Part shown: in pieces, positions 1 to 51,379 of the stretch
How positions within the stretch are numbered: the first letter of the stretch is position 1
How the letters are laid out: each line of letters begins with the position of its first letter
Assembly (NCBI RefSeq): GCF_001194135.2
Contig: NC_068995.1
Span: 36,285,157-36,338,452 of the forward strand
Reading direction: 5' to 3'
Length of the DNA: 53,296 nt
Source of the DNA: Octopus bimaculoides
Taxonomy: Eukaryota
Notes under the pieces: generated by a model
Told to the model about the DNA's origin: nothing
Database searches by the model: none
The model's input: the letters and a program-made list of their open reading frames with translations, nothing else
Position numbers and translations under genes: made by a program

Positions 1-45
<45 letters not shown>

Positions 46-547
46 ACGTGCGTGTACGCTTATACACATAAACTTAGCTGTTATTTCAATCTGAAATGGA
101 ATAAACGTGACTTTTCAAAATTTACAAAACTACCGCCAAGAAATGGAATGGAATCCATGCTTAAATAGAATATCTGAGATGGAGAGAGAGTGCACAGTAA
201 AAGACATTCGATCACAAAGAGAGGGAGGACTCCAGTATAAACACGAAAGAGAGAGAAAAAGCAAATGAGTGAAGTCGTAGACGCAGGCGAAAGAGAGGAG
301 GAGGAGGAGCGAATTACAACATAATAAACAGAAAAGGGTGGAAGTAAATGAAAATTTACGTCTATTGTCATAGCCAGACTAATTTAAAATTGAAATTTCG
401 TTGACATATTGGACCACAAAGCAATACAGATAAAAATTAATGAATCACTAAAGCTTTCGAATTAGTCGCTTTTTTTTTAACGCAGATTTAGCTGGCATTT
501 TTTTTTATATAAATGTATATAGGTAAATTTTGTTTTTGATTTCTATT

Positions 548-776
548 TCAAATGACAACAAAATGAAATAGACAAGTGAATAACATAACGGAGAAGACAA
601 TTTGCCACAGAAAAGGAAAAGTAGAGATCAATGAAATAATCGTATAATTCGCTGCAAATTTATCACCAACGATCGTAAATAAAGCTATCGCGCAATAATA
701 AATCTTTTCATGCGCGCACTTGCTTTCCACTACTGTTTGTAAACATGGGACTTTACAGCAGTCGTCAACTGTTTCC
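548..776 (-). CDS. Candidate terminal exon 2: BH3-like motif plus C-terminal hydrophobic anchor
   Basis: Acceptor TTGTTTCTGCCAG|G at 777/776 completes the phase-2 codon (GA+G=Glu); 75 open codons ETVDDCCKVP...AIALFTIVGDKFAANY...WQIVFSVMLFTCLFHFVVI to TGA at 548-550. A T-rich strand could give hydrophobic residues by chance. Confidence 0.45.
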
Positions 777-1150
777 CTGGCAGAAACAATATTTTCTTAA
801 TAATCTCGTCTAATGTATATTTCACAATAGATATAAAGATTAAAGAAACTTTATCAGTTTCCTTATGAACTTTAGAGGATAGTAAATTAGTTTTTTTTTT
901 TGTTTTGTTTTGTTTTTTCCAGCAAAAATATTTACATACAGATGAAGATTTGATATCTTGGAGACATAGGAATGTATTAAAATTGACTAAATATTAAGTT
1001 TATGTTGCAAACAACGGTAAGGCATATAGATAATACAAAGACAGAAAATCCAGGAAGCGACAACAAAAAAAAAATCGAGTCTCCCAAAAATCTTGGTCAG
1101 AACAAACACAGATCATTTTTAGATAATAAATATATAAAACATTAACTTAC

Positions 1151-1413
1151 TCGATGGTTTCCTCACATGGAACTTCCAAGCCTTCTTTACTAATCTGTTC
1201 GTTTACAAAAGATTTAAGCAAGTAATCTCCTTGTAAACTTGTTTTAGAAATGTGCCCAGGTTTATTTTGCACAGAAGCAGCAAATTCGCTATCAGATTCT
1301 CGATCTGGTGGTAAACAATCATCATTGGAATGCAAAGACATTATTGACAATTCACCTAAAACAGTGGATGTTGCGCCAGGTGGAGTATAAGTGTCGGTAA
1401 GAGTATTATCCAT
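1151..1413 (-). CDS. First coding exon of a host gene; possible Bcl-2-family (Bax/Bak-like alpha1) N-terminus
   Basis: ATG at 1413 in AAAATATGG context with an in-frame upstream TGA; 87 codons plus 2 nt, then a consensus donor GA|GTAAGT (intron starts at 1150). Acidic/Ser/Pro N-terminus followed by SLQGDYLLKSFVNEQISKEG, which resembles Bax alpha1 (KTGALLLQGFIQDR). The exon is well supported; the family assignment is by eye only. Confidence 0.7.
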
Positions 1414-2212
1414 ATTTTGTTCCGAACAAAAAATGTTTCATTGAACAAGTGTTGTAGTTCTGGCTCTTAAATTAGATTCGCCACCAAAATCTACTACTTT
1501 CAGTTCTCTTTTTAAAGAAATAACGTTAATAAGAATTATGGAAGAGAATAGATTTGTTGTGAAGGCTGGTTCATTATTAAAATAGGAAAATAAATCCGAA
1601 ATGTCAACAAAATAAAGGCGAAAAAGCGAAAGGTATCGAAAAAAAATTTTAAATCTGGATACTTTCTTTCACATTTGTAATTCATATACTTCGTTTATAG
1701 TTAAAAAAACTCCAGACAATTTCAAAACATCCAAAGCGTAACAGGAGAAAAGACGTAATGAGTTATATATTTCACAAACAGACTTAGGAATGCGTTGGGT
1801 GAATATGATAACTTCCACTACTGAGTTGTCTACCACTTTTCATAGGAGGACGTCAGACGAACGTATTTCGTCGGACTTGCGCATTTTGAAGTATCCACAA
1901 ACATATTTGAATTTAGAAAAAGACACAACTATCTATCTATCTACAAAAATAAGAAAGATGACCAGCAAAAGTGGACTCCTATATGCTAGAAATAGATGCT
2001 GAATCATCTAACCACGAAAAAAATATATGTTCTCAGTAAAAATTCAGCGACACAACAATTTCTACCCTCATAAATAAATATCTATCTATCTATCTATCTA
2101 TCTGAGTGTTTGTTTGTTTATGTAGTATTATAATAAAAACAACTTAATACTAAACTGAATAATTACTCAATATTTTTTTGTTGAGTACTTATTTATTATA
2201 CTTTTACAAGAC

Positions 2213-2250
2213 GAGAGTGACTTCGAAGTTTCGGTCTGCTAACCTTCGTC
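2213..2250 (-). ncRNA. 5'-truncated hammerhead-ribozyme-like remnant
   Basis: Minus strand (AC)GACGA-A-GGT-TAGCAG-ACC-GAAA-CTTCGAAG-TC-ACTCTC: stem II, GAAA, palindromic stem III and GUC site present; the CU of CUGANGA and the stem I 5' arm are replaced by a (CA)n tract. Confidence 0.4.
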
Positions 2251-2305
2251 GTGTGTGTGTGTGCGCGCGCGTGCGTGTGCGTGCGTGTGCGCGCGCGAGC
2301 GTACA
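2251..2305. repeat. Alternating purine-pyrimidine (GT/GC)n tract, potential Z-DNA former
   Basis: gtgtgtgtgtgtgcgcgcgcgtgcgtgtgcgtgcgtgtgcgcgcgcg with CpGs retained, about 0.85 kb upstream of the 1413 ATG. Confidence 0.8.
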
Positions 2306-2469
2306 CACATCCATATTCACACGAAAACTTGTCAACACTTCCGCATTTTGTGGGAATTACTTCTCTAGGCGTATTTACACATTTCATTGAAAATTTCGCG
2401 TTTTAGAAATTCTCCCTTTTTTGCAATACTTTATCACGGTCCTCTGTTCATTTGGTGGGATGGGGGTTT

Positions 2470-2530
2470 CGCTGACGACGTCCCATTGGCTTTGATATGG
2501 ACTGTCTTTCGGCTCATTGCTAAGTAAGTG
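2470..2530. promoter_or_regulatory. Candidate promoter elements (CCAAT box, CRE-like GACGTC)
   Basis: ATTGG at 2485-2489 (CCAAT on minus) next to TGACGACGTC, within the CpG-retaining 1-2530 region. Motif matches only. Confidence 0.3.
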
Positions 2531-3345
2531 AAANNNNNNNNNNNNNNNNNNNNNNNNNNNNNNNNNNNNNNNNNNNNNNNNNNNNNNNNNNNNNNNNNNN
2601 NNNNNNNNNNNNNNNNNNNNNNNNNNNNNNNNNNNNNNNNNNNNNNNNNNNNNNNNNNNNNNNNNNNNNNNNNNNNNNNNNNNNNNNNNNNNNNNNNNNN
2701 NNNNNNNNNNNNNNNNNNNNNNNNNNNNNNNNNNNNNNNNNNNNNNNNNNNNNNNNNNNNNNNNNNNNNNNNNNNNNNNNNNNNNNNNNNNNNNNNNNNN
2801 NNNNNNNNNNNNNNNNNNNNNNNNNNNNNNNNNNNNNNNNNNNNNNNNNNNNNNNNNNNNNNNNNNNNNNNNNNNNNNNNNNNNNNNNNNNNNNNNNNNN
2901 NNNNNNNNNNNNNNNNNNNNNNNNNNNNNNNNNNNNNNNNNNNNNNNNNNNNNNNNNNNNNNNNNNNNNNNNNNNNNNNNNNNNNNNNNNNNNNNNNNNN
3001 NNNNNNNNNNNNNNNNNNNNNNNNNNNNNNNNNNNNNNNNNNNNNNNNNNNNNNNNNNNNNNNNNNNNNNNNNNNNNNNNNNNNNNNNNNNNNNNNNNNN
3101 NNNNNNNNNNNNNNNNNNNNNNNNNNNNNNNNNNNNNNNNNNNNNNNNNNNNNNNNNNNNNNNNNNNNNNNNNNNNNNNNNNTTACAGGAAGTTAATTTA
3201 CAATAATGTCAATACATTATTGTTCTAACGTTTATCGTGTGCTTCTTTTTCGGATATCTGATCCTGATATTATGTATGTAGGTATATATGTGTGTATATA
3301 ATATATACATATGTGTGTGTGTGTGTGTATGTATTTATATATATA

Positions 3346-4621: not shown

Positions 4622-4676
<55 letters not shown>

Positions 4677-4678
<2 letters not shown>

Positions 4679-4885
4679 TCATCATCATCATCATCGTTTA
4701 ACGTCCGCTTTCCATGCTAGCATGGGTTGGACGATTTGACTGAGGACTGGTGAAACCGGATGGCAACACCAGGCTCCAGTCTGATTTGGCAGAGTTTCTA
4801 CAGCTGGATGCCCTTCCTAACGCCAACCACTCAGAGAGTGTAGTGGGTGCTTTTACGTGTCACCCGCACGTTACGTGTCACCCGC

Positions 4886-7745: not shown

Positions 7746-7835
7746 TTCTTCTTCTTCTTCTTCTTCTTCTTTTCTTCTTCTTCTTCTTCCTCTTCTTCTT
7801 CTTCCTCTTCTTCTTCTTCTTCCTCTTCTTCTTCT

Positions 7836-7876
<41 letters not shown>

Positions 7877-7883
7877 TTCTTCT

Positions 7884-7918
<35 letters not shown>

Positions 7919-7925
7919 TTCTTCT
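7746..7925. repeat. (CTT)n/(CCT) homopyrimidine tract, about 180 bp
   Basis: Direct reading; source of the spurious poly-K/R/S/L/F ORFs. Confidence 0.98.
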
Positions 7926-8689: not shown

Positions 8690-8884
8690 TTCGACAAGAG
8701 TACCCTTGATGCCCTAGTGCTCTGAGTGCCCCAACAACTACTGGAATGACAGACACTCTCCTCATAGTCCACATTCTTGCAATTTCGTCTTTTAGTAGTC
8801 TGTATTTTTCAATCTTTTCTAGTTCTTTGTCACTAATGCTTGCATCCCCAGGCATTACAATATTTATAATCTTAGTTTCCTTAT
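8690..8884 (-). mobile_element. R4/Dong-type LINE C-terminal restriction-like endonuclease fragment
   Basis: IINIVMPGDASISDKELEKIEKYRLLKDEIARMW...IPVVVGAL is the typical PD..EK..KY..L tail of R4-clade elements. Confidence 0.8.
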
Positions 8885-9175
8885 TCATCATCATCGTTTA
8901 ACATCCGCTTTCCATGCTAGCATGGGTTGGACGATTTGACTGAGGACTGGTGAATCAGATGGCTACACCAGGCTCCAATCTTATTTGGCAGAGTTTCTAC
9001 AGCTGGATGCCCTTCCTGACGCCAACCACTCCGAGAGTGTAGTGGGTACTTTTACGTGCTACCGGCACGAAGGCCAGTCAGGCGGTACTGGCAATGGCCA
9101 CATTCAAAATGGTGTATTTTACATGCCACCTGCACAGGAGCCAGTCCAGCGGCACTGGCAACGATCTTACTCGAA
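8885..9175 (-). mobile_element. (ATG)n-tailed RTE 3'-end retroposon copy
   Basis: Same sequence as 4677-4888, extended by ggcggtactggcaa/ggcactggcaac internal repeats. Confidence 0.85.
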
Positions 9176-9551: not shown

Positions 9552-10570
9552 CAGGCATAGGAGTGGCTGTGTGGTAAGTAGCTTGCTTACGAACCACATG
9601 GTTCNNNNNNNNNNNNNNNNNNNNNNNNNNNNNNNNNNNNNNNNNNNNNNNNNNNNNNNNNNNNNNNNNNNNNNNNNNNNNNNNNNNNNNNNNNNNNNNN
9701 NNNNNNNNNNNNNNNNNNNNNNNNNNNNNNNNNNNNNNNNNNNNNNNNNNNNNNNNNNNNNNNNNNNNNNNNNNNNNNNNNNNNNNNNNNNNNNNNNNNN
9801 NNNNNNNNNNNNNNNNNNNNNNNNNNNNNNNNNNNNNNNNNNNNNNNNNNNNNNNNNNNNNNNNNNNNNNNNNNNNNNNNNNNNNNNNNNNNNNNNNNNN
9901 NNNNNNNNNNNNNNNNNNNNNNNNNNNNNNNNNNNNNNNNNNNNNNNNNNNNNNNNNNNNNNNNNNNNNNNNNNNNNNNNNNNNNNNNNNNNNNNNNNNN
10001 NNNNNNNNNNNNNNNNNNNNNNNNNNNNNNNNNNNNNNNNNNNNNNNNNNNNNNNNNNNNNNNNNNNNNNNNNNNNNNNNNNNNNNNNNNNNNNNNNNNN
10101 NNNNNNNNNNNNNNNNNNNNNNNNNNNNNNNNNNNNNNNNNNNNNNNNNNNNNNNNNNNNNNNNNNNNNNNNNNNNNNNNNNNNNNNNNNNNNNNNNNNN
10201 NNNNNNNNNNNNNNNNNNNNNNNNNNNNNNNNNNNNNNNNNNNNNNNNNNNNNNNNNNNNNNNNNNNNNNNNNNNNNNNNNNNNNNNNNNNNNNNNNNNN
10301 NNNNNNNNNNNNNNNNNNNNNNNNNNNNNNNNNNNNNNNNNNNNNNNNNNNNNNNNNNNNNNNNNNNNNNNNNNNNNNNNNNNNNNNNNNNNNNNNNNNN
10401 NNNNATATATATATGCGTGTGTGTGTGCATATGTTTATGTGTCTGTGTTTGTCCTTCAACATCACTTGACAACCGATGCTGGTGTGTTTACATCCCTGTA
10501 ACTTAGCGGTTTGGCAAAAGAGACCAATAGAATAAGTATTAGGCTTACAAAGAATAAGTCCTGCTAGATC
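9552..10570 (+). mobile_element. tRNA-headed SINE type A spanning a gap
   Basis: Head aggagtggctgtgtggtaagtagcttgc; 3' part gtaacttagcggtttggcaaaagagacc after the N-run. Confidence 0.85.
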
Positions 10571-14530: not shown

Positions 14531-15217
14531 TATATTAATATTAACAGTACATTCACATTTATATATATATANNNNNNNNNNNNNNNNNNNNNNNNNNNNN
14601 NNNNNNNNNNNNNNNNNNNNNNNNNNNNNNNNNNNNNNNNNNNNNNNNNNNNNNNNNNNNNNNNNNNNNNNNNNNNNNNNNNNNNNNNNNNNNNNNNNNN
14701 NNNNNNNNNNNNNNNNNNNNNNNNNNNNNNNNNNNNNNNNNNNNNNNNNNNNNNNNNNNNNNNNNNNNNNNNNNNNNNNNNNNNNNNNNNNNNNNNNNNN
14801 NNNNNNNNNNNNNNNNNNNNNNNNNNNNNNNNNNNNNNNNNNNNNNNNNNNNNNNNNNNNNNNNNNNNNNNNNNNNNNNNNNNNNNNNNNNNNNNNNNNN
14901 NNNNNNNNNNNNNNNNNNNNNNNNNNNNNNNNNNNNNNNNNNNNNNNNNNNNNNNNNNNNNNNNNNNNNNNNNNNNNNNNNNNNNNNNNNNNNNNNNNNN
15001 NNNNNNNNNNNNNNNNNNNNNNNNNNNNNNNNNNNNNNNNNNNNNNNNNNNNNNNNNNNNNNNNNNNNNNNNNNNNNNNNNNNNNNNNNNNNNNNNNNNN
15101 NNNNNNNNNNNNNNNNNNNNNNNNNNNNNNNNNNNNNNNNNNNNNNNNNNNNNNNNNNNNNNNNNNNNNNNNNNNNNNNNNNNNNNNNNNNNNNNNNNNN
15201 NNNNNNNNNNNNNNNNN

Positions 15218-17345: not shown

Positions 17346-18785
17346 AGTTAAAGAAGTGATTTTAAATTCTCAATCGCAGAATAATGCTAATAATATAGCC
17401 TGAACAGGATAAACTACCCCTATTTTGCAGAGAAAAGTGTAGGTGGCTAGCTGTGGACTCGAACTCACATCCCCGTGATTACGCGTCACAATGCTTTGAC
17501 ANNNNNNNNNNNNNNNNNNNNNNNNNNNNNNNNNNNNNNNNNNNNNNNNNNNNNNNNNNNNNNNNNNNNNNNNNNNNNNNNNNNNNNNNNNNNNNNNNNN
17601 NNNNNNNNNNNNNNNNNNNNNNNNNNNNNNNNNNNNNNNNNNNNNNNNNNNNNNNNNNNNNNNNNNNNNNNNNNNNNNNNNNNNNNNNNNNNNNNNNNNN
17701 NNNNNNNNNNNNNNNNNNNNNNNNNNNNNNNNNNNNNNNNNNNNNNNNNNNNNNNNNNNNNNNNNNNNNNNNNNNNNNNNNNNNNNNNNNNNNNNNNNNN
17801 NNNNNNNNNNNNNNNNNNNNNNNNNNNNNNNNNNNNNNNNNNNNNNNNNNNNNNNNNNNNNNNNNNNNNNNNNNNNNNNNNNNNNNNNNNNNNNNNNNNN
17901 NNNNNNNNNNNNNNNNNNNNNNNNNNNNNNNNNNNNNNNNNNNNNNNNNNNNNNNNNNNNNNNNNNNNNNNNNNNNNNNNNNNNNNNNNNNNNNNNNNNN
18001 NNNNNNNNNNNNNNNNNNNNNNNNNNNNNNNNNNNNNNNNNNNNNNNNNNNNNNNNNNNNNNNNNNNNNNNNNNNNNNNNNNNNNNNNNNNNNNNNNNNN
18101 NNNNNNNNNNNNNNNNNNNNNNNNNNNNNNNNNNNNNNNNNNNNNNNNNNNNNNNNNNNNNNNNNNNNNNNNNNNNNNNNNNNNNNNNNNNNNNNNNNNN
18201 NNNNNNNNNNNNNNNNNNNNNNNNNNNNNNNNNNNNNNNNNNNNNNNNNNNNNNNNNNNNNNNNNNNNNNNNNNNNNNNNNNNNNNNNNNNNNNNNNNNN
18301 NNNNNNNNNNNNNNNNNNNNNNNNNNNNNNNNNNNNNNNNNNNNNNNNNNNNNNNNNNNNNNNNNNNNNNNNNNNNNNNNNNNNNNNNNNNNNCCTATTT
18401 TGCAGAGAAAAGTGTAGGTGGCTAGCTGTGGACTCGAACTCACATCCCCGTGATTACGCGTCACGATGCTTTGACCGATTAAGCTAAACTACCCACTACA
18501 AATTCCTCTGCAAATTTAAGATATATAAATCTCGCTTTATGAGACGCTCTCATATGTTAAATTCAAATTACGACAAACATAAATAAACAAACAAAGTTTG
18601 CTTTTTTAGAAGCGTTGAGATGCCTTAGAAAGTTAAAGAAGTGATTTTAAATTCTCAATTGCAGAATAATGCTAATAATATAGCCTGAACAGGATAAACT
18701 ACCCCTATTTTGCAGAGAAAAGTGTAGGTGGCTAGCTGTGGACTCGAACTCACATCCCCGTGATTACGCGTCACAATGCTTTGAC
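17346..18785 (-). repeat. Tandem array of a 310-bp tRNA-like unit flanked by a 12-bp direct repeat
   Basis: Units recur at 17419, 18394 and 18704 (cctattttgcagag); ATGATTATGTAA at 17334-17345 and 18786-18797. Confidence 0.8.
18420..18493 (-). pseudogene. tRNA-like gene, Thr(CGT)-like, identical to 13946-14019
   Basis: Same 74-nt sequence and TTTT terminator; truncated copies at 17445-17501 and 18730-18785. Confidence 0.65.
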
Positions 18786-20958: not shown

Positions 20959-21277
20959 CATACATATATATATCTACATATATATACATATGTATTTATA
21001 CATATATATATATATATATACATACATATATATATATACATATACATACACACACACNNNNNNNNNNNNNNNNNNNNNNNNNNNNNNNNNNNNNNNNNNN
21101 NNNNNNNNNNNNNNNNNNNNNNNNNNNNNNNNNNNNNNNNNNNNNNNNNNNNNNNNNNNNNNNNNNNNNNNNNNNNNNNNNNNNNNNNNNNNNNNNNNNN
21201 NNNNNNNNNNNNNNNNNNNNNNNNNNNNNNNNNNNNNNNNNNNNNNNNNNNNNNNNNNNNNNNNNNNNNNNNNNNNN

Positions 21278-25533: not shown

Positions 25534-27082
25534 NNNNNNNNNNNNNNNNNNNNNNNNNNNNNNNNNNNNNNNNNNNNNNNNNNNNNNNNNNNNNNNNNNN
25601 NNNNNNNNNNNNNNNNNNNNNNNNNNNNNNNNNNNNNNNNNNNNNNNNNNNNNNNNNNNNNNNNNNNNNNNNNNNNNNNNNNNNNNNNNNNNNNNNNNNN
25701 NNNNNNNNNNNNNNNNNNNNNNNNNNNNNNNNNNNNNNNNNNNNNNNNNNNNNNNNNNNNNNNNNNNNNNNNNNNNNNNNNNNNNNNNNNNNNNNNNNNN
25801 NNNNNNNNNNNNNNNNNNNNNNNNNNNNNNNNNNNNNNNNNNNNNNNNNNNNNNNNNNNNNNNNNNNNNNNNNNNNNNNNNNNNNNNNNNNNNNNNNNNN
25901 NNNNNNNNNNNNNNNNNNNNNNNNNNNNNNNNNNNNNNNNNNNNNNNNNNNNNNNNNNNNNNNNNNNNNNNNNNNNNNNNNNNNNNNNNNNNNNNNNNNN
26001 NNNNNNNNNNNNNNNNNNNNNNNNNNNNNNNNNTAGTTGAATTTCAGCCTCTTTGTGCCTCCTCAGTGACATGTACTCTGTGCATTAAAAATTCAATGAA
26101 TTTCTTTCATAAAACTGAAGCAGAATATCTCACTAGCCAATTTTTTGATTTAACCAACTAAAGAAAAATACATAGAATGAAGGTAGTCATTGATTACTGT
26201 CTTGAATGAAAAAGGAGAATTTTCCAACTGGCAAAAAAAAACCTTTGCTATAAAGACAAGTTGTTGAGAGAGAGAAATATAGCGAGAGAGAGATAGTATG
26301 TGACAAAGAAAGAATTAAAATTTGTTTCAAAAAAAGAAAAACATAAAACAGGTTGTTGTTGAGCCTAGCAATGTGATCATTGCAGTAGGTTTCTACTGAA
26401 TGATCGATTTCATCTTGACCAGGTTGTTACCTGGCAGCATAGTAATCGTTTACTTATCAAAAGAATCTATTGCCTAAGACATTCACCATTAACATCATCC
26501 AATACTCGCATTTCCATGTTTGTGTGGGTCAGATGGAATTTATTGAGGTAGATTTTCTTTGGCCAAACATGTTTTTCCTCATTGCCTGTAATTATTTATT
26601 TGTTTATAAAGATCCAAGTATGGTCCTTAACAGCATAAGAAAATTTACCAGAAATTTTCTGAAAAAATATGGAGAAATTATTTAAGTTAAATAGGTGCAG
26701 GTGTTGGTGTGTGTTTATGAAACATTGCTTGTATGACAGCAACTATCACATGATATCATGACAAGAGCAAATCACACACACACATGTGCACACACACACA
26801 CACACACACATACATGCATACATATATACATACCTGTATATCCACACACACACACACACACACATATATATGGTTTGTTTTGATCCTCTATTCGTGTTTA
26901 GTGCTTAACTGATGTTTGGAGATGTTGGAAGCATTGATACCTAAATGTTGAATGATGAAAATGAGTGTTCAACACCGCACTGGTCGCTTTAATTCACAAA
27001 TAAAGAAATTCTACCCACCAATGCAGTGTTGAGCACTCATTTTCACTGTTCGACATTTACATACATACATACATAACATATA

Positions 27083-27477: not shown

Positions 27478-27750
27478 NNNNNNNNNNNNNNNNNNNNNNN
27501 NNNNNNNNNNNNNNNNNNNNNNNNNNNNNNNNNNNNATACATACATACATACATACATACATACATACATACACATAAAATGTACCTACACCCCACTCTG
27601 TAAAGTGATTGGCATTAGGATGAACATCCAGCTGTAGAAACCATACCACAACTGACAATTGGAGTCTACACAGCTCCCTGACTGGCCAACTTCCATCAAA
27701 CCATCCAAGCTGTGCCAGTATGGAAAACGGACGTTAAATGATGATGATGA
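27083..27750. mobile_element. Two oppositely oriented (ATG)n-tailed RTE 3'-end copies (27083-27420 minus, 27580-27750 plus)
   Basis: (CAT)n tail on the left, (GAT)n tail on the right, shared ggcattagga..catccagctgtagaaa motif. Confidence 0.8.
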
Positions 27751-38613: not shown

Positions 38614-39222
38614 TGAGGTCTAATCAATAAGTATCCGGACTGTTGCCATAGTAATGAAGCTAAAGCACGTAGAGAGAAATCATTTGGCACAGATTGTCCT
38701 TGAACTCTGTTGTGCATGTGCACTAAAATTTTGACATTCTAGCTCACTTCCAGGCTTTACAGCAGTGCTTGGAAGGAAGGTGTGTAGTGTGTGATTGTCA
38801 TATTGACCATGACAGAGAAAGTTGTCATGGCGATGCCTACTCAAAGTTGCAGAAAGTGTATGGAGGGGAGTCGTCTATGAGTCACACACATGTGTACAAG
38901 TGGTTTAGACGTTTCCAAGAGGATCAAAAAATGTCAATATTGACGAATGTTCTGGGAGACCCACAACCAGCAGAATTGAGAAAAACATCACAGATGTGCA
39001 TGCCACTATGAGGGGAAATCATTGAATCACCATCCATGAGGATGTGCAGATTAGTTACAGTTCAGTTCAGTCCATTATCACTGCAGATTTGGGTATGAGA
39101 TGCATACCTGCCAGGTTTATGCCAAGACTGCTATCAGCTGACCAAAGAGACACTTGGGTTTCAGTTGCACAAGATTTCCTTGATTGTGTCAAGAACGATG
39201 AAAACGTTTTGAGAACTTTGCA
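38614..39222 (+). mobile_element. Mariner 5' half
   Basis: TA|TGAGGTCT terminus; AYSKLQKVYG...HVYKWFRRFQE and LGMRCIPARFMPRLLS (WVPR-like motif). Confidence 0.8.
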
Positions 39223-39559
39223 TAGGCCCCTGAGCAGGTATCACCAAACTTTTGGCAAAATTTTATGCAGATTCCCTGCTCAACTTTCTCTGTCATGGGC
39301 AATGCGGTGATCACACTCTACATACCTTCCTACCCCATGTTAAAATAAATTTGTTTGAAATTTTAAAGTGTTTCCATTATTTTGCCCAACCTCTGTATGT
39401 GTGGGTGTGTGTGTGTGCACGCGCACACCCTTGTCTAGACATCACATAATGGTTGTAAATGAGCCGCATTGTCATAGAAGTTAGGTTGTTAATTTCCAGT
39501 CACCCGGGGTGGACTGCCCGACTCTTCAGCTGATTTATTGCTTATTAACAATTTAATTG

Positions 39560-40055
39560 TCTACATGGAAGCCCGTTTGGCACCACTGCTGTATCTCCTG
39601 GAAGACAAAGCTCTGCATCTACAATGCATCAGCCCTCTCCATTTTCCTTTAAGGAGCAGAAACGTGCTCCACCCCCTCAAAGACCTTGGCAGAGAGGATC
39701 AACAGCTCTGATAGCAGATCCCTGAGAACCATTGAGAATCTCAGATGATACCATCATGGTTCCAACAAAGAACTGTGTGCATGCATGCATCAGCCTGCAG
39801 CCTCCCTCCTCATAGCTATCTGTCACATGCGCTGGTATGGATGTGTCCTCCATCGCTTTATTCTCATTTGATACAGAAGCTGCAAGCTGGAAGAGGCTAC
39901 ATGGAAGAGGCTACATGGAAGGCCCCTCACTAGATAGTTGGACATGATTGGGGAAGATCTCCAGAGGCATGATGTCACCTTGGAGGATGCTGAGAGGCTA
40001 GCATGGGACCACCAGTGTTGGAGACCACTAGTTGACCTGATTAACTCTACACATG
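39560..40055 (+). mobile_element. RTE LINE 3' ORF fragment
   Basis: KLCIYNAS..GAETC..INSSDSRSLRTIENLR*YHHGSNKEL..RWYG motifs across frames. Confidence 0.7.
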
Positions 40056-40243
40056 GAGACTTCTTTGGGTTCATGAAACTTGGGATGACCCCCAGCCCCA
40101 TCAAGCAAGAACATGAAATAAGCAAGCAGTGTGTATTTGTCATATCAGAGAAAGCATAGATTTTAAAAATTCCAACCAGTGATGATATCAGGTATAAGAT
40201 TCATGACACAAAGCAGCGTTATATTTTTAAAATTTTACCATAT

Positions 40244-41843: not shown

Positions 41844-43156
41844 TGAGAGGAAGTCAAAAATTATCTGCACTTTTGTTATAACGTATCTTTATTATTGTCA
41901 CACTGCCTTCTGTGCATGTGTGCTTTTAGTTGGTACTATTGTGGTCACATGATCAAAGTTTGAGCCTAATCATGCCATTTTTCTTTCTGGCTTTACAGTG
42001 TAAGCATGACTGCTCCACTAGCAATGTGCACCAAAGGAGAACAAAGAACAGTGATCCGATTTCCCTGGTCGGAAGGTGTGTCAGGTGCTGAAATTCATTG
42101 AAGGCTTTTAGCACAATATGGGGACAGTGCACTACCACATAGAAGTGTGTATGAGTGGATTCAGAACTTTAAAAGTGGCCAGACAAGCATGATGCTCGAA
42201 GAGGGAGCATGATACCCATCAACCTCTACCACTGACAAGAAGATTCAGCAGGCTTGAGAGATGGTAATGGTGAACCAGTGAGTTATCATCGATGAGGTAG
42301 CTTGTTGTCTGCAGATTAGTCATGGTTCTGCCTATCAAATCATCCACAATGAGTTCAGCTTCCATAAAGTCTGTGCAAGATGGATGCCAAGAGAGCTTAT
42401 TGCAGAGCACATACACACAAATGTGTTAAGGCCTGCCAATGTTTACTGGGTTGCTACAACTTTGAGGGTGAGAAATCTTTGAGCAGAATAGTCACAGGAG
42501 ATGAAACATGGGTCCTTAATTATGAGGCAGAATCCAAAAGACAGAGTATAGAGTGGGAAAATTCTGGCTCGCCAGCGATGAAGAAATTCAAAACTCAGTC
42601 TTCTGCGGAAAAGGTGATGCTAGCCCTTTTTTGGGACTCTAAAGGACCTATACTGGAAGACTGCCTGGAAAAGGGGTGTATGATCAACAGTGCAAGATAC
42701 ACTGCTTTACTGGCCAAGAAACTGAAGCCAGCAATTCGCACCAAATGCCAAAGCCTATTGTCAAAGAAAGTTTTGTTGTTGCATGACAATACATGCCCAC
42801 ATACGGCTGCCCAGACCGTTGAAACCATTAACCAATTGAGTTTTGAGGTGCTGGAGCACCCTGCCTACAGCCCAGACCTCACCCCTTCCGACTATTATAT
42901 CTCTGGACTGTTCAAAGATGGTTTACAAGGTCGTCAGTTTCCTACAGATGAAGATGTAAAGGAAGCAGTGCAAAGATGGTCACACAACTAACCAAAAACC
43001 TTCTTCTTAGAGGGAATACACAAGCTTGTGGACTGCTGGACCAAGTGCATCAAAAAGGAAGGAGACTATATAGAAAAATGATGCATTGTTTATCCCCTGA
43101 TTTTGTGTAAATACATTGAAAGATCGAGAGTGTGTATAATTTTTGACTCTCCTTCA
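41844..43156 (+). mobile_element. Full-length mariner (DD34D), 1313 bp, inactivated transposase
   Basis: About 28-bp TIRs and TA flanks; TGDETW, HDNTCPH and YSPDLTPSD with 34 residues between the 2nd and 3rd D (counted); several stops and a frameshift near 42410. Confidence 0.95.
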
Positions 43157-44400: not shown

Positions 44401-45297
44401 CAAGGTGGTATCAAAAAGTACCTGGACTAGTTCTGTAGCATGCCAACAGATGGCAGCACATAGTTGTGTGCACAGTGAGAGCTAGCAGTGAGCTTAATGA
44501 GGCAGTGTGCTGAGTGACATCACTGTGTTTACTTCGCATGTTGTGAAATTTGTGTTTTTCTGATCATGTGTATGCTGTAGTCTGCAATTTTATCATGGAC
44601 AGGAAGTTGGAACAAAGAGCCAACGTGAAATTTTGCATCAAACTAGAGAAATTTGCTGCAGAGACATTGAGCATGCTTTGGCAAGCTTACAGTGACAAGG
44701 CAATGGGTTGTATGCAATATTTTGGGTGGCATGGACACTTCAAAAGTGGAAGAACATCCCTGGAAGATGATAATCGATCTGGAAGACCTGCTGTAAGCGT
44801 CTCCCCTAGAAATATGGAGAAAATTCATCAGCTTGTGCATGAAGATTGTTGGAAGACAATCAATGTTTTGAAGCATTTGAGAGAGAAAATTTGGCAAAAG
44901 CAACTGGATCTATGGAGCACAAAGAATTGGATTCTTCACGATGACAATGAGCCCTGTCACCAAGCTCTCTTCACTTGTGAGTTTCTCGCCAAAAGCAACA
45001 TGGGATCACTTTTGCACCCGCCCTATTCACCAGATTTAGTACCTGCAGACTTCTCAAAGTTGAAAATGCTGCTCAAAGTTCACCATTTAAACACCATTTT
45101 TGAGATCAAGAGCAAATCACAGAAGATCCTCAACTCGCTTACAGAAAACAACTTCCAAGCTGGATTCCAAAATGGCAGGAATGCTGGGCCTGGTGTATTG
45201 CTGCGCAGGTGACTATTTCGAAGATGATGTTAAAACTTAGGTAAATAAGTTGTTTTATTAAACATAACTAGTCCAGAAACTTTTTGATACTGCCTTA
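44401..45297 (+). mobile_element. Internally deleted mariner with both TIRs
   Basis: About 32-bp TIRs caaggtggtatcaaaaagtacctggactagtt; TA flanks; ORF 44550-45212 joins the HTH region directly to HDDNEPCH...HPPYSPDLVPADF. Confidence 0.92.
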
Positions 45298-47960: not shown

Positions 47961-48350
47961 NNNNNNNNNNNNNNNNNNNNNNNNNNNNNNNNNNNNNNNN
48001 NNNNNNNNNNNNNNNNNNNNNNNNNNNNNNNNNNNNNNNNNNNNNNNNNNNNNNNNNNNNNNNNNNNNNNNNNNNNNNNNNNNNNNNNNNNNNNNNNNNN
48101 NNNNNNNNNNNNNNNNNNNNNNNNNNNNNNNNNNNNNNNNNNNNNNNNNNNNNNNNNNNNNNNNNNNNNNNNNNNNNNNNNNNNNNNNNNNNNNNNNNNN
48201 NNNNNNNNNNNNNNNNNNNNNNNNNNNNNNNNNNNNNNNNNNNNNNNNNNNCTATAGTAGAAGACACTTGCCCAAGGTGCCACGCAGTAGCATTGAACCC
48301 AGAACTATGTGGTTGGTAAGCAAGCTATTTACCACACAGCCACTCCTGCG

Positions 48351-49784: not shown

Positions 49785-50401
49785 GGCCAACTTAACCATA
49801 AGACATTTTAACCGAATGTGATAACTGTGGGTAGAGAAGATTGCTACCTATCTTATTTGAAAAAAACCGTTGGAAGTTGCAACGCTACGAGACAGTACAT
49901 TGAACAAGGAGGGAAGAAAAGAAGANNNNNNNNNNNNNNNNNNNNNNNNNNNNNNNNNNNNNNNNNNNNNNNNNNNNNNNNNNNNNNNNNNNNNNNNNNN
50001 NNNNNNNNNNNNNNNNNNNNNNNNNNNNNNNNNNNNNNNNNNNNNNNNNNNNNNNNNNNNNNNNNNNNNNNNNNNNNNNNNNNNNNNNNNNNNNNNNNNN
50101 NNNNNNNNNNNNNNNNNNNNNNNNNNNNNNNNNNNNNNNNNNNNNNNNNNNNNNNNNNNNNNNNNNNNNNNNNNNNNNNNNNNNNNNNNNNNNNNNNNNN
50201 NNNNNNNNNNNNNNNNNNNNNNNNNNNNNNNNNNNNNNNNNNNNNNNNNNNNNNNNNNNNNNNNNNNNNNNNNNNNNNNNNNNNNNNNNATATATATATA
50301 TATAAACAGGCAGTAATCTAGTAGGTCTGCATTAGTAAGACTTGAAAAAATATAGAAAAAAGTGAAAGGGGCACAGTGAACTTGCCATGAGGAGTGGAAT
50401 A

Positions 50402-50433: not shown

Positions 50434-51379
50434 GGCAGAGAAAAAAAGAGAAAAGTCAAACAGAGTTTACATCCTCTCAGTTTAAAAAGCTTGCAAAACA
50501 TACATACATTACATACACACAAAGATACATACATAGATAGATACATATATACATGAATGTGTGTGCATGTGCGTGTGTAAACACTATTAAGTTTACTACA
50601 TATGTCTTGCTAATGCAGACTAACACCAGTCTCTTTAGAGTCTGTCTGATCATATATATGTGTGTGTGTGTGTGTTTGTGAAACATGTCATCTTTATTTA
50701 CCTTTCCGGCGATCTGCTACCTTTCCCATTTCTTACAGTCTTTATTTGCGTTTTTCGCATTTTTATAGCTAAACCATGAGTTGTGTGGTGACTGTCAACT
50801 TACTAGAAATTCCTATCGATTTTGATATCGGACAAAGTATATAACATACACCAGATACTAAACCTTCTTTAATAACTGACAATAACGTTATCCGTGTTTT
50901 GTTATCTCTACAAGCTATGTATATGACTGATGCTTACTGTTCCTTAATGAGATCTTTTCACATCATACTTCCCTATAGCTATGCATGTATATGTGTGTAT
51001 GTCATTATCGTTATCATTCAACGTCTGCCTTCCACACTGAGTAGTTTGAGTGATAGAGGTGATCTACCTCCTGCTGTTGTCAAGTGACATGACAGAGGTA
51101 GTGGTATGAGTGAGAAATGTCAGTACAAATATATATATATACACTTAGGTGAGCACATAAATGCAAAACAAAATGGGAAAAGTAGTACTCGAATCCCGTT
51201 CGGCCGACGGTTGTGATGTATTCATCACAACTGTCCGATGAACAGGAACATAAAACTCTGAATAACAGTTCTGTGATAAATTTTGCAGCGTTAATAAAAA
51301 GCGTGTGTATGTATGTATGTATGTATGTATATATATATANNNNNNNNNNNNNNNNNNNNNNNNNNNCAGTATATGTATA

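What the first reader, a model, noticed from the sequence alone, without database searches (positions are those of the whole stretch)
548..1413. Compact two-exon gene that may encode a BH3-only-like, tail-anchored Bcl-2 relative
Seen: exon 1413-1151 (good ATG context, GTAAGT donor, phase 2) joins in frame over a 374-nt intron to 776-548, giving 163 aa. The order is acidic N-terminus, Bax-alpha1-like helix (QGDYLLKSFVNEQISKEG), a Cys-rich linker, IVGDKFAANY (compare Bim RIGDEFNAYY), then about 30 hydrophobic residues and a stop. I see no strong donor after the GD motif that would lead to BH1/BH2 exons. Known: BH3-only proteins are hard to detect by homology and poorly catalogued in molluscs; truncated BH3+TM isoforms such as N-Bak exist. 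Inference: a pro-apoptotic BH3+TM protein, or a short isoform of a Bax/Bak-like gene. Caveat: position -4 from Gly is Phe rather than the canonical Leu.
Basis: partly seen in the sequence, partly recalled or inferred. Interest (0 to 1): 0.7.

Follow-up and report, generated by a model that had tools for sequence, protein, structure and literature searches.

The report
Octopus BAX first exon plus intronic ORF
The first "exon" is the real first coding exon of the already annotated octopus BAX cell-death gene, but the proposed second exon with its BH3-like motif and membrane tail is a chance open frame inside the 25-kb first intron, so no new BH3-only protein is supported.

Summary
The window is Octopus bimaculoides.

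Exon 1 (window 1413-1151, minus strand) is the first coding exon of the annotated BAX orthologue. In every annotated model its donor joins an exon about 24.9 kb beyond the left edge of the window. That exon carries the true BH3 (LGRDLRRLADAFE).

The proposed exon 2 lies in intron 1 and is not a conserved coding exon:
- O. vulgaris and O. sinensis carry a +1 frameshift just before the "GD" motif and a TAA in the "tail"; O. sinensis has a second 1-nt insertion at the GD codons.
- Argonauta has stops, non-3n indels and no GD.
- Substitutions show no third-position bias.
- The tail is 49% T.
- The same intron holds 15 in-phase ORFs at least as long.
- No donor or poly(A) signal follows the ORF.
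- No protein anywhere resembles the peptide.

The ORF overlaps a CpG-rich non-coding element conserved from Octopus to Argonauta (core 667-748). It is probably regulatory. Interest is low.

The parts
1151..1413 (-). First coding exon of the O. bimaculoides BAX orthologue (LOC128249508). It encodes a disordered acidic N-terminal extension plus helix alpha1 and ends in phase 2.
   Evidence: It is 99% identical to residues 1-88 of P0001 and 78% to O. vulgaris 'apoptosis regulator BAX' P0002. Substitutions against O. vulgaris fall 8/9/19 by codon position, a coding signature.
1186..1245 (-). Codons for helix alpha1 (residues about 57-76, SLQGDYLLKSFVNEQISKEG).
   Evidence: A phmmer search of PDB aligns this segment of the orthologue to BAX residues about 17-37. 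AlphaFold2 of the orthologue gives helix 61-80 with pLDDT 92-93.
1145..1150 (-). GTAAGT donor of intron 1.
   Evidence: The donor is conserved in O. vulgaris. In the annotated models it joins to TTTTTTTTTTCAG|TGAAGAT at about L001 36299, which is about 24.9 kb left of window position 1.
1..1150 (-). Proximal 1.15 kb of intron 1. The intron is about 26 kb in O. bimaculoides, about 20 kb in O. vulgaris and 8.3 kb in Argonauta, and it runs off the window into an assembly gap.
   Evidence: Window 1-2533 equals L001 11413-8881 at 100% identity. L001 11414-12593 is N.
548..776 (-). It is not a conserved coding exon.
   Evidence: O. vulgaris and O. sinensis have a +1 insertion between window 685 and 684, and CAA>TAA at 604-602. 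O. sinensis has a further +1 between 668 and 667. Argonauta has stops and +2/+6/-16 indels. Substitutions fall 5/3/5 by codon position. The 75-aa peptide has 0 hits among 1.84 billion representatives.
656..679 (-). The BH3-like string FTIVGDKF, judged a chance match.
   Evidence: It fails the PROSITE-type BH3 pattern (as remembered). Two other loose matches occur in the six-frame translation of the window. Argonauta has VVPTK in place of GD. The O. sinensis indel falls inside it.
667..748 (.). Core of a conserved non-coding element in BAX intron 1. It is CpG-rich and contains the exact 14-mer TGTTTACAAACAGT at 732-745.
   Evidence: It is the only non-repeat syntenic nucleotide match between the whole O. 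bimaculoides locus and the Argonauta hians locus: 71% over 84 nt, E 3e-6 with the 229-nt query and 7e-4 locus-wide. The 14-mer occurs once per locus, on the same strand, in intron 1. There are 9 CpG in 141 nt, the 99th percentile for the window.
673..873 (.). Block of 96-98% identity between O. bimaculoides and O. vulgaris. It straddles the putative acceptor at 777/776.
   Evidence: Sliding 100-nt identity has a locus median of 91% and a 95th percentile of 96%. There are 33 such blocks in the locus, so the block is elevated but not exceptional.

Best explanation
The finding joins two unrelated things.

(1) Window 1413-1151 (minus strand) is the genuine first coding exon of the Octopus bimaculoides BAX orthologue, a multi-BH, pore-forming-type Bcl-2 family gene. 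It encodes a fast-evolving disordered N-terminal extension and helix alpha1. Its GTAAGT donor is spliced across a roughly 26-kb intron to the real exon 2, about 24.9 kb beyond the left end of the window. That exon carries the true BH3 helix (ALGRDLRRLADAFERSY). A BH1/BH2 exon follows, hidden in an assembly gap in this species, and then a transmembrane exon.

(2) Window 776-548 is not an exon of a conserved protein. It is a chance open frame in the first intron. Its 'tail anchor' is what T-rich intron sequence translates to, and its 'BH3' is a chance GD match.

The 5' half of that ORF coincides with a short CpG-rich non-coding element conserved across Octopoda. That explains why the region looks unusually clean. 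This element is most likely a cis-regulatory module in intron 1 that controls BAX transcription. This last step is inferred, at roughly 50% confidence. The conserved core TGTTTACAAACA is a palindromic pair of forkhead-type RYAAAYA sites, but which factor binds was not tested.
For: Identity of exon 1 and the gene:
- The window is 100% identical to O. bimaculoides CM046615.1.
- Exon 1 matches P0001 (LOC128249508) and O. vulgaris / O. sinensis 'apoptosis regulator BAX'.
- The orthologue has Pfam Bcl-2 at 3.6e-14. Its best PDB matches are BAX (7e-12, query 58-236 against BAX 15-188), with alpha1 and BH3 aligned.
- The AF2 model (pLDDT 81.5) has a Bcl-2 fold, with target-normalised TM-scores of 0.75-0.82.

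Where exon 1 splices:
- The real exon 2 is at about L001 36299, behind a strong polypyrimidine acceptor.
- All six annotated proteins in four species share the exon1>BH3-exon junction.
- Intronless contigs from three sequencing runs of a related animal carry the same junction.

Against the candidate exon coding for protein:
- It has a frameshift and nonsense codon in O. vulgaris, confirmed in the independent O. sinensis assembly, which adds a second indel.
- Argonauta has stops, non-3n indels and no GD.
- There is no codon-position bias, and the tail is 49% T.
- The same intron has 15 comparable in-phase ORFs.
- No donor or poly(A) signal follows.
- Pfam, PDB and an exhaustive phmmer search gave no hit.

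For the conserved element:
- It is the unique syntenic nucleotide match to Argonauta, conserved better than coding exons 1 and 2.
- The 14-mer is unique, and the CpG cluster is at the 99th percentile.
- No RNA family or stable structure was found.
Against: - Use of the 776 acceptor in this species is therefore not directly excluded.
- The acceptor and about 100 nt upstream are perfectly conserved in three Octopus species. That pattern also fits an alternative exon.
- Between the Octopus species, conservation of the block is only in the top 5% or so, and 33 similar blocks exist in the locus.
- The Argonauta match is short (84 nt, 71%).
- The regulatory role and the forkhead reading rest on sequence alone.
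Confidence: 0.85

Rival explanations
1. One reading: in O. bimaculoides, exon 1 is alternatively spliced to 776-548 as a terminal exon. This would give a 163-aa protein with alpha1, a BH3-like helix and a tail anchor, a lineage-specific N-Bak-like short isoform.
For: The frame is open and in phase, and the acceptor has a fair pyrimidine tract. The string FTIVGDKF matches h3-G-D-x-h4 of a BH3. The last 30 or so residues are hydrophobic (KD up to 2.1).
Against: - The frame is broken in O. vulgaris, O. sinensis and Argonauta.
- The ORF is within chance for this intron.
- No poly(A) signal follows within 547 nt.
- No annotated isoform uses it.
- The peptide has no homologue anywhere.
- The motif fails the stricter BH3 pattern and is not amphipathic.
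- The AF2 model has pLDDT 49.6.
Confidence: 0.03
2. The conserved block is an alternative exon whose function lies at the RNA level. It could be a non-productive (premature-stop, NMD-type) exon. It could also be a 57-nt in-frame cassette (776-720, donor CAA|GTGCGC) that would insert 19 residues into the alpha1-alpha2 loop. Either would tune BAX output.
For: The acceptor and its flanks are 100% conserved in three Octopus species. AGTGCGC is conserved in Argonauta. A 57-nt exon would keep phase 2 (read from the sequence). Alternative exons typically have conserved flanks (general knowledge).
Against: - The candidate donor matches only 6 of 9 consensus positions, and no site reaches 7 of 9.
- In Argonauta the upstream acceptor is not conserved. 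The equivalent exon would be 40 nt, frame-shifting, with a different peptide.
- None of the six annotated isoforms contains it.
- There is no transcript evidence.
Confidence: 0.08
3. Nothing functional lies at 548-873. The raised identity is stochastic variation in a slowly diverging intron, and the Argonauta match is fortuitous.
For: There are 33 blocks of at least 96% identity over 100 nt in the Octopus-Octopus comparison. The Argonauta match is short and 71% identical.
Against: - The match is syntenic, on the same strand and in the same intron. It is the only non-repeat hit in 46 kb x 32 kb, at E 7e-4 locus-wide.
- It includes an exact unique 14-mer.
- Coding exons 1 and 2 do not reach that threshold at the nucleotide level.
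- CpG density is at the 99th percentile.
Confidence: 0.12

Closest known systems
Vertebrate BAX (human/mouse; PDB 1F16, 5W62)
   Same: The orthologue aligns to BAX from alpha1 to the C-terminal alpha9 and BAX is the best PDB match. It has the Pfam Bcl-2 domain, the Bcl-2 fold, BH3 on a separate downstream exon and a C-terminal membrane helix. NCBI names the O. vulgaris and O. sinensis proteins 'apoptosis regulator BAX'.
   Different: The octopus protein has a disordered N-terminal extension of about 56 residues. Its BH3 reads LADAF (Ala, not Gly, before Asp). Its first intron is 8-26 kb. Pro-apoptotic activity has not been tested.
N-Bak and other short BH3-containing splice isoforms of Bax/Bak (from my own knowledge, not checked here)
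   Different: In N-Bak the true BH3 exon is retained and a small extra exon shifts the frame. Here the proposed isoform would skip the true BH3 exon and rely on a non-conserved look-alike. No transcript supports it.
BH3-only proteins such as Bim (IGDEF)
   Same: The four-residue resemblance V-G-D-x-F.
   Different: Position h2 is Phe, not Leu. There are no charged surface residues and the segment sits in a hydrophobic stretch. The motif is absent or frame-shifted in relatives. BH3-only proteins are polyphyletic and defined by a short motif that is easy to match by chance (PMC11463336, citing Aouacheria et al. 2013).
Intronic regulatory elements of pro-apoptotic genes, e.g. the p53 response element reported in intron 1 of mammalian BAX (own knowledge, not checked here)
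   Same: A short conserved non-coding element in the first intron of a BAX gene.
   Different: No p53-type half-sites are seen by eye. The conserved core looks forkhead-like instead. No functional data exist.

Membership tests
BH3-only / BH3 motif (for the 776-548 peptide) | Amphipathic helix with h1-x3-L(h2)-x2-h3-[G/A]-D-x-h4 and polar or charged faces (PROSITE-type BH3 pattern, quoted from memory) | tested here: not met
   Only h3, G, D and h4 fit. Position h2 is F, G-3 is T, D+1 is K and D+3 is A. The regex finds no match. The surrounding 19-mer windows have positive hydropathy of 0.6-1.0.
BH3-only / BH3 motif (for the 776-548 peptide) | Motif and reading frame conserved in orthologues | tested here: not met
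   O. vulgaris and O. sinensis have a +1 frameshift 6 codons before the GD motif and a TAA in the tail. O. sinensis has an extra base at the GD codons. Argonauta has VVPTK and flanking stops.
BH3-only / BH3 motif (for the 776-548 peptide) | The segment is expressed as part of an mRNA or protein | not testable with these tools
No annotated isoform contains the segment. The protein databases hold no such peptide, but they also hold no transcript-derived Octopus BAX, so this absence carries little weight.
BH3-only / BH3 motif (for the 776-548 peptide) | Binds the groove of a pro-survival Bcl-2 protein or activates BAX/BAK | not testable with these tools
   This needs binding or cell-death assays.
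Tail-anchored membrane protein (for the 776-548 peptide) | A single C-terminal transmembrane helix of about 20 residues with a short, usually basic, luminal end, conserved in relatives | tested here: not met
   The hydrophobic run is about 45 residues long with no basic flank. It is coded by 49%-T sequence. A stop codon interrupts it in O. vulgaris and O. sinensis.
Multi-BH Bcl-2 family, BAX-like (for the gene that owns exon 1) | Bcl-2 domain (BH1-BH2-BH3 region, PF00452) | tested here: met
   O. vulgaris orthologue: E 3.6e-14, 53.5 bits against a cut-off of 31.4. The O. bimaculoides model lacks the domain only because it is truncated.
Multi-BH Bcl-2 family, BAX-like (for the gene that owns exon 1) | Closest solved relatives are BAX, aligned over alpha1 to alpha9 | tested here: met
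   BAX chains rank first (7e-12 to 1e-10) and cover query residues 58-236. Bcl-xL follows at 3e-10.
Multi-BH Bcl-2 family, BAX-like (for the gene that owns exon 1) | Helical-bundle Bcl-2 fold | tested here: met
   AF2 gives pLDDT 81.5 and pTM 0.70. Foldseek against PDB gives probability 1.00 and target-normalised TM-scores of 0.75-0.82 to Bcl-xL, Bcl-2, BOK and BAX. Fold alone does not separate BAX from pro-survival members.
Multi-BH Bcl-2 family, BAX-like (for the gene that owns exon 1) | BH1/BH2 exon present in O. bimaculoides itself | not testable with these tools
   The expected position (between L001 38985 and 41054) falls in the N run 39158-40181. The transmembrane exon is present at L001 41302-41391.
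Multi-BH Bcl-2 family, BAX-like (for the gene that owns exon 1) | Pro-apoptotic permeabilisation of the mitochondrial outer membrane | not testable with these tools
   This needs a functional assay.
Conserved non-coding (cis-regulatory) element | Orthologous, syntenic conservation across distant lineages without a conserved reading frame or RNA structure | tested here: met
   Searches show the conservation. Searches show there is no conserved frame. Searches found no RNA family or structure.
Conserved non-coding (cis-regulatory) element | Enhancer or silencer activity, open chromatin, or factor binding | not testable with these tools
   No chromatin or reporter data are available here.

The most novel reading that the evidence does not exclude
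The octopod-conserved, CpG-rich block in BAX intron 1 (window about 640-780) is a functional alternative exon, either a non-productive exon or a 57-nt in-frame cassette, that sets BAX dosage. In O. bimaculoides its extended open frame is occasionally translated into an alpha1-plus-hydrophobic-tail product.
Probability: 0.07. Interest if true: 0.45.

Novelty: already known. Interest (0 to 1): 0.1.

Why it matters
As found, it matters little. The gene is an annotated BAX orthologue, and no new BH3-only protein needs adding to the mollusc apoptosis catalogue.

Three by-products have modest value:
- The O. bimaculoides RefSeq entry ('uncharacterized protein', 139 aa) can be explained and renamed. 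It is a BAX model truncated by an assembly gap.
- A short intron-1 element conserved between Octopus and Argonauta is a candidate regulatory switch for a core cell-death gene in cephalopods.
- The case shows how T-rich introns plus a loose GD motif can imitate 'BH3 plus tail anchor'.

Tried and rejected
- **Pfam and PDB sequence searches with the 163-aa product:** no hits at E up to 10.
- **Exhaustive phmmer of the 75-aa exon-2 peptide against 1.84 billion representatives:** 0 hits.
- **AlphaFold2 of the 163-aa product, single sequence:** pLDDT 49.6, uninformative.
- **Non-coding RNA gene in the conserved block:** rejected. Rfam gave only spurious mir-297/466-type hits on simple repeats elsewhere. 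The alifold covariation term was -0.21. Fold z-scores were -0.4 and -0.8.
- **Repeat or transposon origin of the conserved block:** rejected. The 14-mer and the block are single-copy in every locus.
- **p53-type response element in the block:** none seen by eye, not formally scanned.
- **Using Octopus-Octopus identity alone as evidence of function:** rejected, because the species are too close (median 91%, 33 blocks of at least 96%).
- **Decapodiform genomes:** they could not be reached with the available collections. Only transcript-like contigs of a relative were found.

Full report
**1. What is in the sequence**

On the minus strand, an ATG at 1413-1411 (context AAAATATGG, in-frame TGA upstream) opens a 263-nt exon. 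It ends ...ATCGA|GTAAGT at 1151/1150, which is phase 2. Downstream, TTGTTTCTGCCAG|G places a possible acceptor so that an exon would start at 776. The joined frame then runs to the TGA at 550-548.

**2. Source and identity of exon 1**

The 163-aa query found two proteins, and both cover only its first 55%:
- O. bimaculoides LOC128249508 (P0001, 139 aa, 'uncharacterized protein'), 99% identical.
- O. vulgaris 'apoptosis regulator BAX' (P0002, 239 aa), 76% identical.

The genomic locus of P0001 (L001, CM046615.1) is 100% identical to the window. Window 1-2533 equals L001 11413-8881, so window coordinate = 11414 minus L001 coordinate.

The evidence that the gene is BAX-like:
- P0002 carries the Pfam Bcl-2 domain (3.6e-14).
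- Its best PDB sequence matches are BAX chains (7e-12), aligned from query residue 58 to 236.
- In that alignment LQGDYLLKSFVNEQIYKEG lies on BAX helix alpha1, and LGRDLRRLADAFEQS lies on the BAX BH3 (LSESLRRIGDELDSN).
- An AlphaFold2 model built on 27 homologues (pLDDT 81.5) shows residues 1-60 disordered, alpha1 at 61-80 and the BH3 helix at 99-116.
- Foldseek places the model in the Bcl-2 fold, with target-normalised TM-scores of 0.75-0.82.

**3. Where exon 1 really splices**

tblastn places the next coding exon (EDYAKEQEAHALGRDLRRLADAFERSYERKAVKKKAS) at about L001 36299-36430. It sits behind a strong acceptor, TTTTTTTTTTCAG|TGAAGAT. This is about 24.9 kb beyond window position 1.

The same exon1>BH3-exon junction is seen in:
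- all three annotated O. vulgaris isoforms (239, 232 and 209 aa, which differ only at the C-terminus);
- the O. sinensis protein;
- the Argonauta hians protein;
- intronless 1-kb contigs from three sequencing runs of a related animal (P0004).

**4. The candidate exon 2 fails as a coding exon**

In the orthologous stretch of O. vulgaris, one extra base lies between window 685 and 684, six codons before the 'GD' motif. It turns ...YYCAIALFTIVGDKF... into ...YYCAIDFIYDRWR*. Even in the O. bimaculoides register, CAA (604-602) is TAA. The independent O. sinensis assembly has both changes, plus a further single-base insertion inside the V-G-D codons.

In Argonauta hians the region aligns only in patches, with +2, +6 and -16 nt indels. 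The 'PCLQTV' codons are flanked by stops, and 'GD' is replaced by VVPTK.

Between O. bimaculoides and O. vulgaris, substitutions by codon position are:

| Region | Position 1 | Position 2 | Position 3 |
|---|---|---|---|
| Exon 1 | 8 | 9 | 19 |
| Candidate exon 2 | 5 | 3 | 5 |

Exon 1 shows the third-position excess expected of coding sequence. The candidate does not, and its changes include a nonsense change.

Other points against coding:
- The hydrophobic 'tail' is coded by 49%-T sequence. T-rich sequence reads as F/L/I/V in any frame.
- The open frame is not unusual. In intron 1 alone, 49 of 1,195 AG sites are followed by at least 76 in-phase codons. They form 15 distinct ORFs, and the candidate is the shortest.
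- No donor-like site (7 or more of 9) and no AATAAA/ATTAAA follows between 776 and the window edge. The stretch therefore fits neither an internal exon nor an obvious terminal one.
- The peptide has no Pfam, PDB or database relative, including an exhaustive HMMER pass over 1.84 billion representatives.
- A single-sequence AF2 model is uninformative (pLDDT 49.6).
- The BH3 resemblance is limited to V-G-D-x-F. The stricter BH3 pattern (from memory) fails at four positions. The loose pattern turns up three times in the six-frame translation of this one window.

**5. Why the region looked good: a conserved non-coding element**

O. bimaculoides and O. vulgaris are 93.9% identical over 776-548, and 96.2% over its first 106 nt. 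Exon 1 and the neighbouring intron are 86-88% identical.

On its own this is weak evidence. The locus-wide median for 100-nt windows is 91%, and 33 blocks reach 96%. The block here (673-873) straddles the putative acceptor.

The comparison with Argonauta is more telling. In a 46-kb by 32-kb comparison, the only non-repeat syntenic nucleotide hit is window 667-748 against L003 11184-11267. It is 71% identical, with E 7e-4 locus-wide and 3e-6 with the short query. Coding exons 1 and 2 do not reach that threshold.

The match contains an exact 14-mer, TGTTTACAAACAGT (window 732-745). It occurs once in the window and once in each of the L001, L002 and L003 loci, always in intron 1 on the gene strand. 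Further conserved patches are AGTGCGC, TTGCG[C/T]GATA, ACGAATTAT and TTCACTTG.

The block holds 9 CpG in 141 nt (observed/expected 1.6). That is the 99th percentile of 150-nt windows in a window that averages 2. This also explains the Cys/Ala-rich translation (TGC, GCG codons).

The block is not an RNA gene by the available tests. It has no Rfam match, negligible covariation, and fold z-scores of -0.4 and -0.8.

I infer a cis-regulatory element of the BAX gene. TGTTTAC/ACAAACA reads as two overlapping forkhead-type RYAAAYA sites in a palindrome. That is a lead from memory, not a test.

**6. What remains open**

No RNA data could be examined. An O. bimaculoides-specific use of the 776 acceptor is therefore not excluded. 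Neither is a conserved non-productive alternative exon, nor a 57-nt in-frame cassette (776-720, with a weak CAA|GTGCGC donor). I rate these at about 3% and 8%.

The protein databases hold no transcript-derived Octopus BAX at all, so their silence on the peptide carries little weight for expression.

**7. Verdict**

Exon 1 is a known, annotated BAX first exon. The proposed second exon and the BH3-only/tail-anchor reading are not supported. The only mildly new item is the intron-1 conserved element. Literature context: BAX, BAK and BOK are conserved in lophotrochozoans, and BH3-only proteins are a polyphyletic group defined by a short motif (PMC11463336). This is why motif-only calls such as this one need conservation or expression support.

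Noticed in passing
L001 36299-36455 and L001 39158-40181 (left of the window): The RefSeq O. bimaculoides model LOC128249508 (139 aa, 'uncharacterized protein') is a truncated BAX. It reads through the exon-2 donor (GAC|GTAAAT) into intron 2 (...KKKASDVNHYLLITNFFKF*). The BH1/BH2 exon expected by synteny with O. vulgaris (L002 34796-35023) falls in a run of N. The transmembrane exon is present at L001 41302-41391.
   Followed up: yes
window 2251-2313: An alternating purine-pyrimidine (CG/CA)n tract lies about 840-900 nt upstream of the BAX ATG. It is the most CpG-dense spot in the window (17-18 CpG per 150 nt). It gives spurious sub-threshold hits to the mir-297/mir-466/mir-3149 Rfam models.
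   Followed up: partly
window 63-193: A second block of intron 1 is 98% identical between O. bimaculoides and O. vulgaris (…GGATTCCATTCCATTTCTTGGCGGTAGTTTTGTAAATTTTGAAAAGTCACG…). blastn found no match in Argonauta.
   Followed up: partly
window 1414-1425 versus L002 10001-10012: O. vulgaris and O. sinensis BAX start four codons earlier (MEQN-MDN). In O. bimaculoides that upstream ATG is TCG, so translation starts at the ATG at 1413.
   Followed up: yes
L002 (O. vulgaris), proteins P0072 and P0073: Three annotated O. vulgaris BAX isoforms differ only at the C-terminus: 239 aa; 232 aa, which lacks the last 7 residues; and 209 aa, which ends ...HGGWVRI and lacks the membrane helix. This resembles tail-less BAX variants.
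   Followed up: partly
window 42380-42991 and 44550-45212 (+): ORFs with partial DDE transposase domains (Transposase_1 at 4e-12, DDE_3). They are remnants of a mariner/Tc1-type element.
   Followed up: partly
window 4644-4843 and 8883-9042 (L001 6571-6770 and 2372-2531), and other copies: A SINE-like repeat of about 150-180 nt is present in many copies in the Octopus loci and, at 70-76% identity, in more than 15 copies in the Argonauta locus.
   Followed up: no
window 2534-3182, 9605-10404, 14572-15217, 17502-18393, 21058-21277, 25534-26033, 27478-27536, 47961-48251, 49926-50289, 51340-51366: These are runs of N (assembly gaps). Most of the long 'ORFs' listed mechanically in the window run across these gaps and are artefacts.
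   Followed up: yes
window 1-57; 7746-7925; about 1930-1945 and about 2085-2110: Microsatellites: (TA)n at the window edge, (TTC)60, and (GATA)n tracts upstream of BAX.
   Followed up: no
L004-L006 (Logan contigs SRR24189495, SRR24189497, SRR24189503): Intronless contigs encode a 235-aa BAX (P0004) 49% identical to O. vulgaris BAX. Its alpha1 is similar (LEAHILLDSFIGDQISKSG) and its BH3 also has Ala (RRMADVF). It is probably from another cephalopod. The species was not identified.
   Followed up: partly
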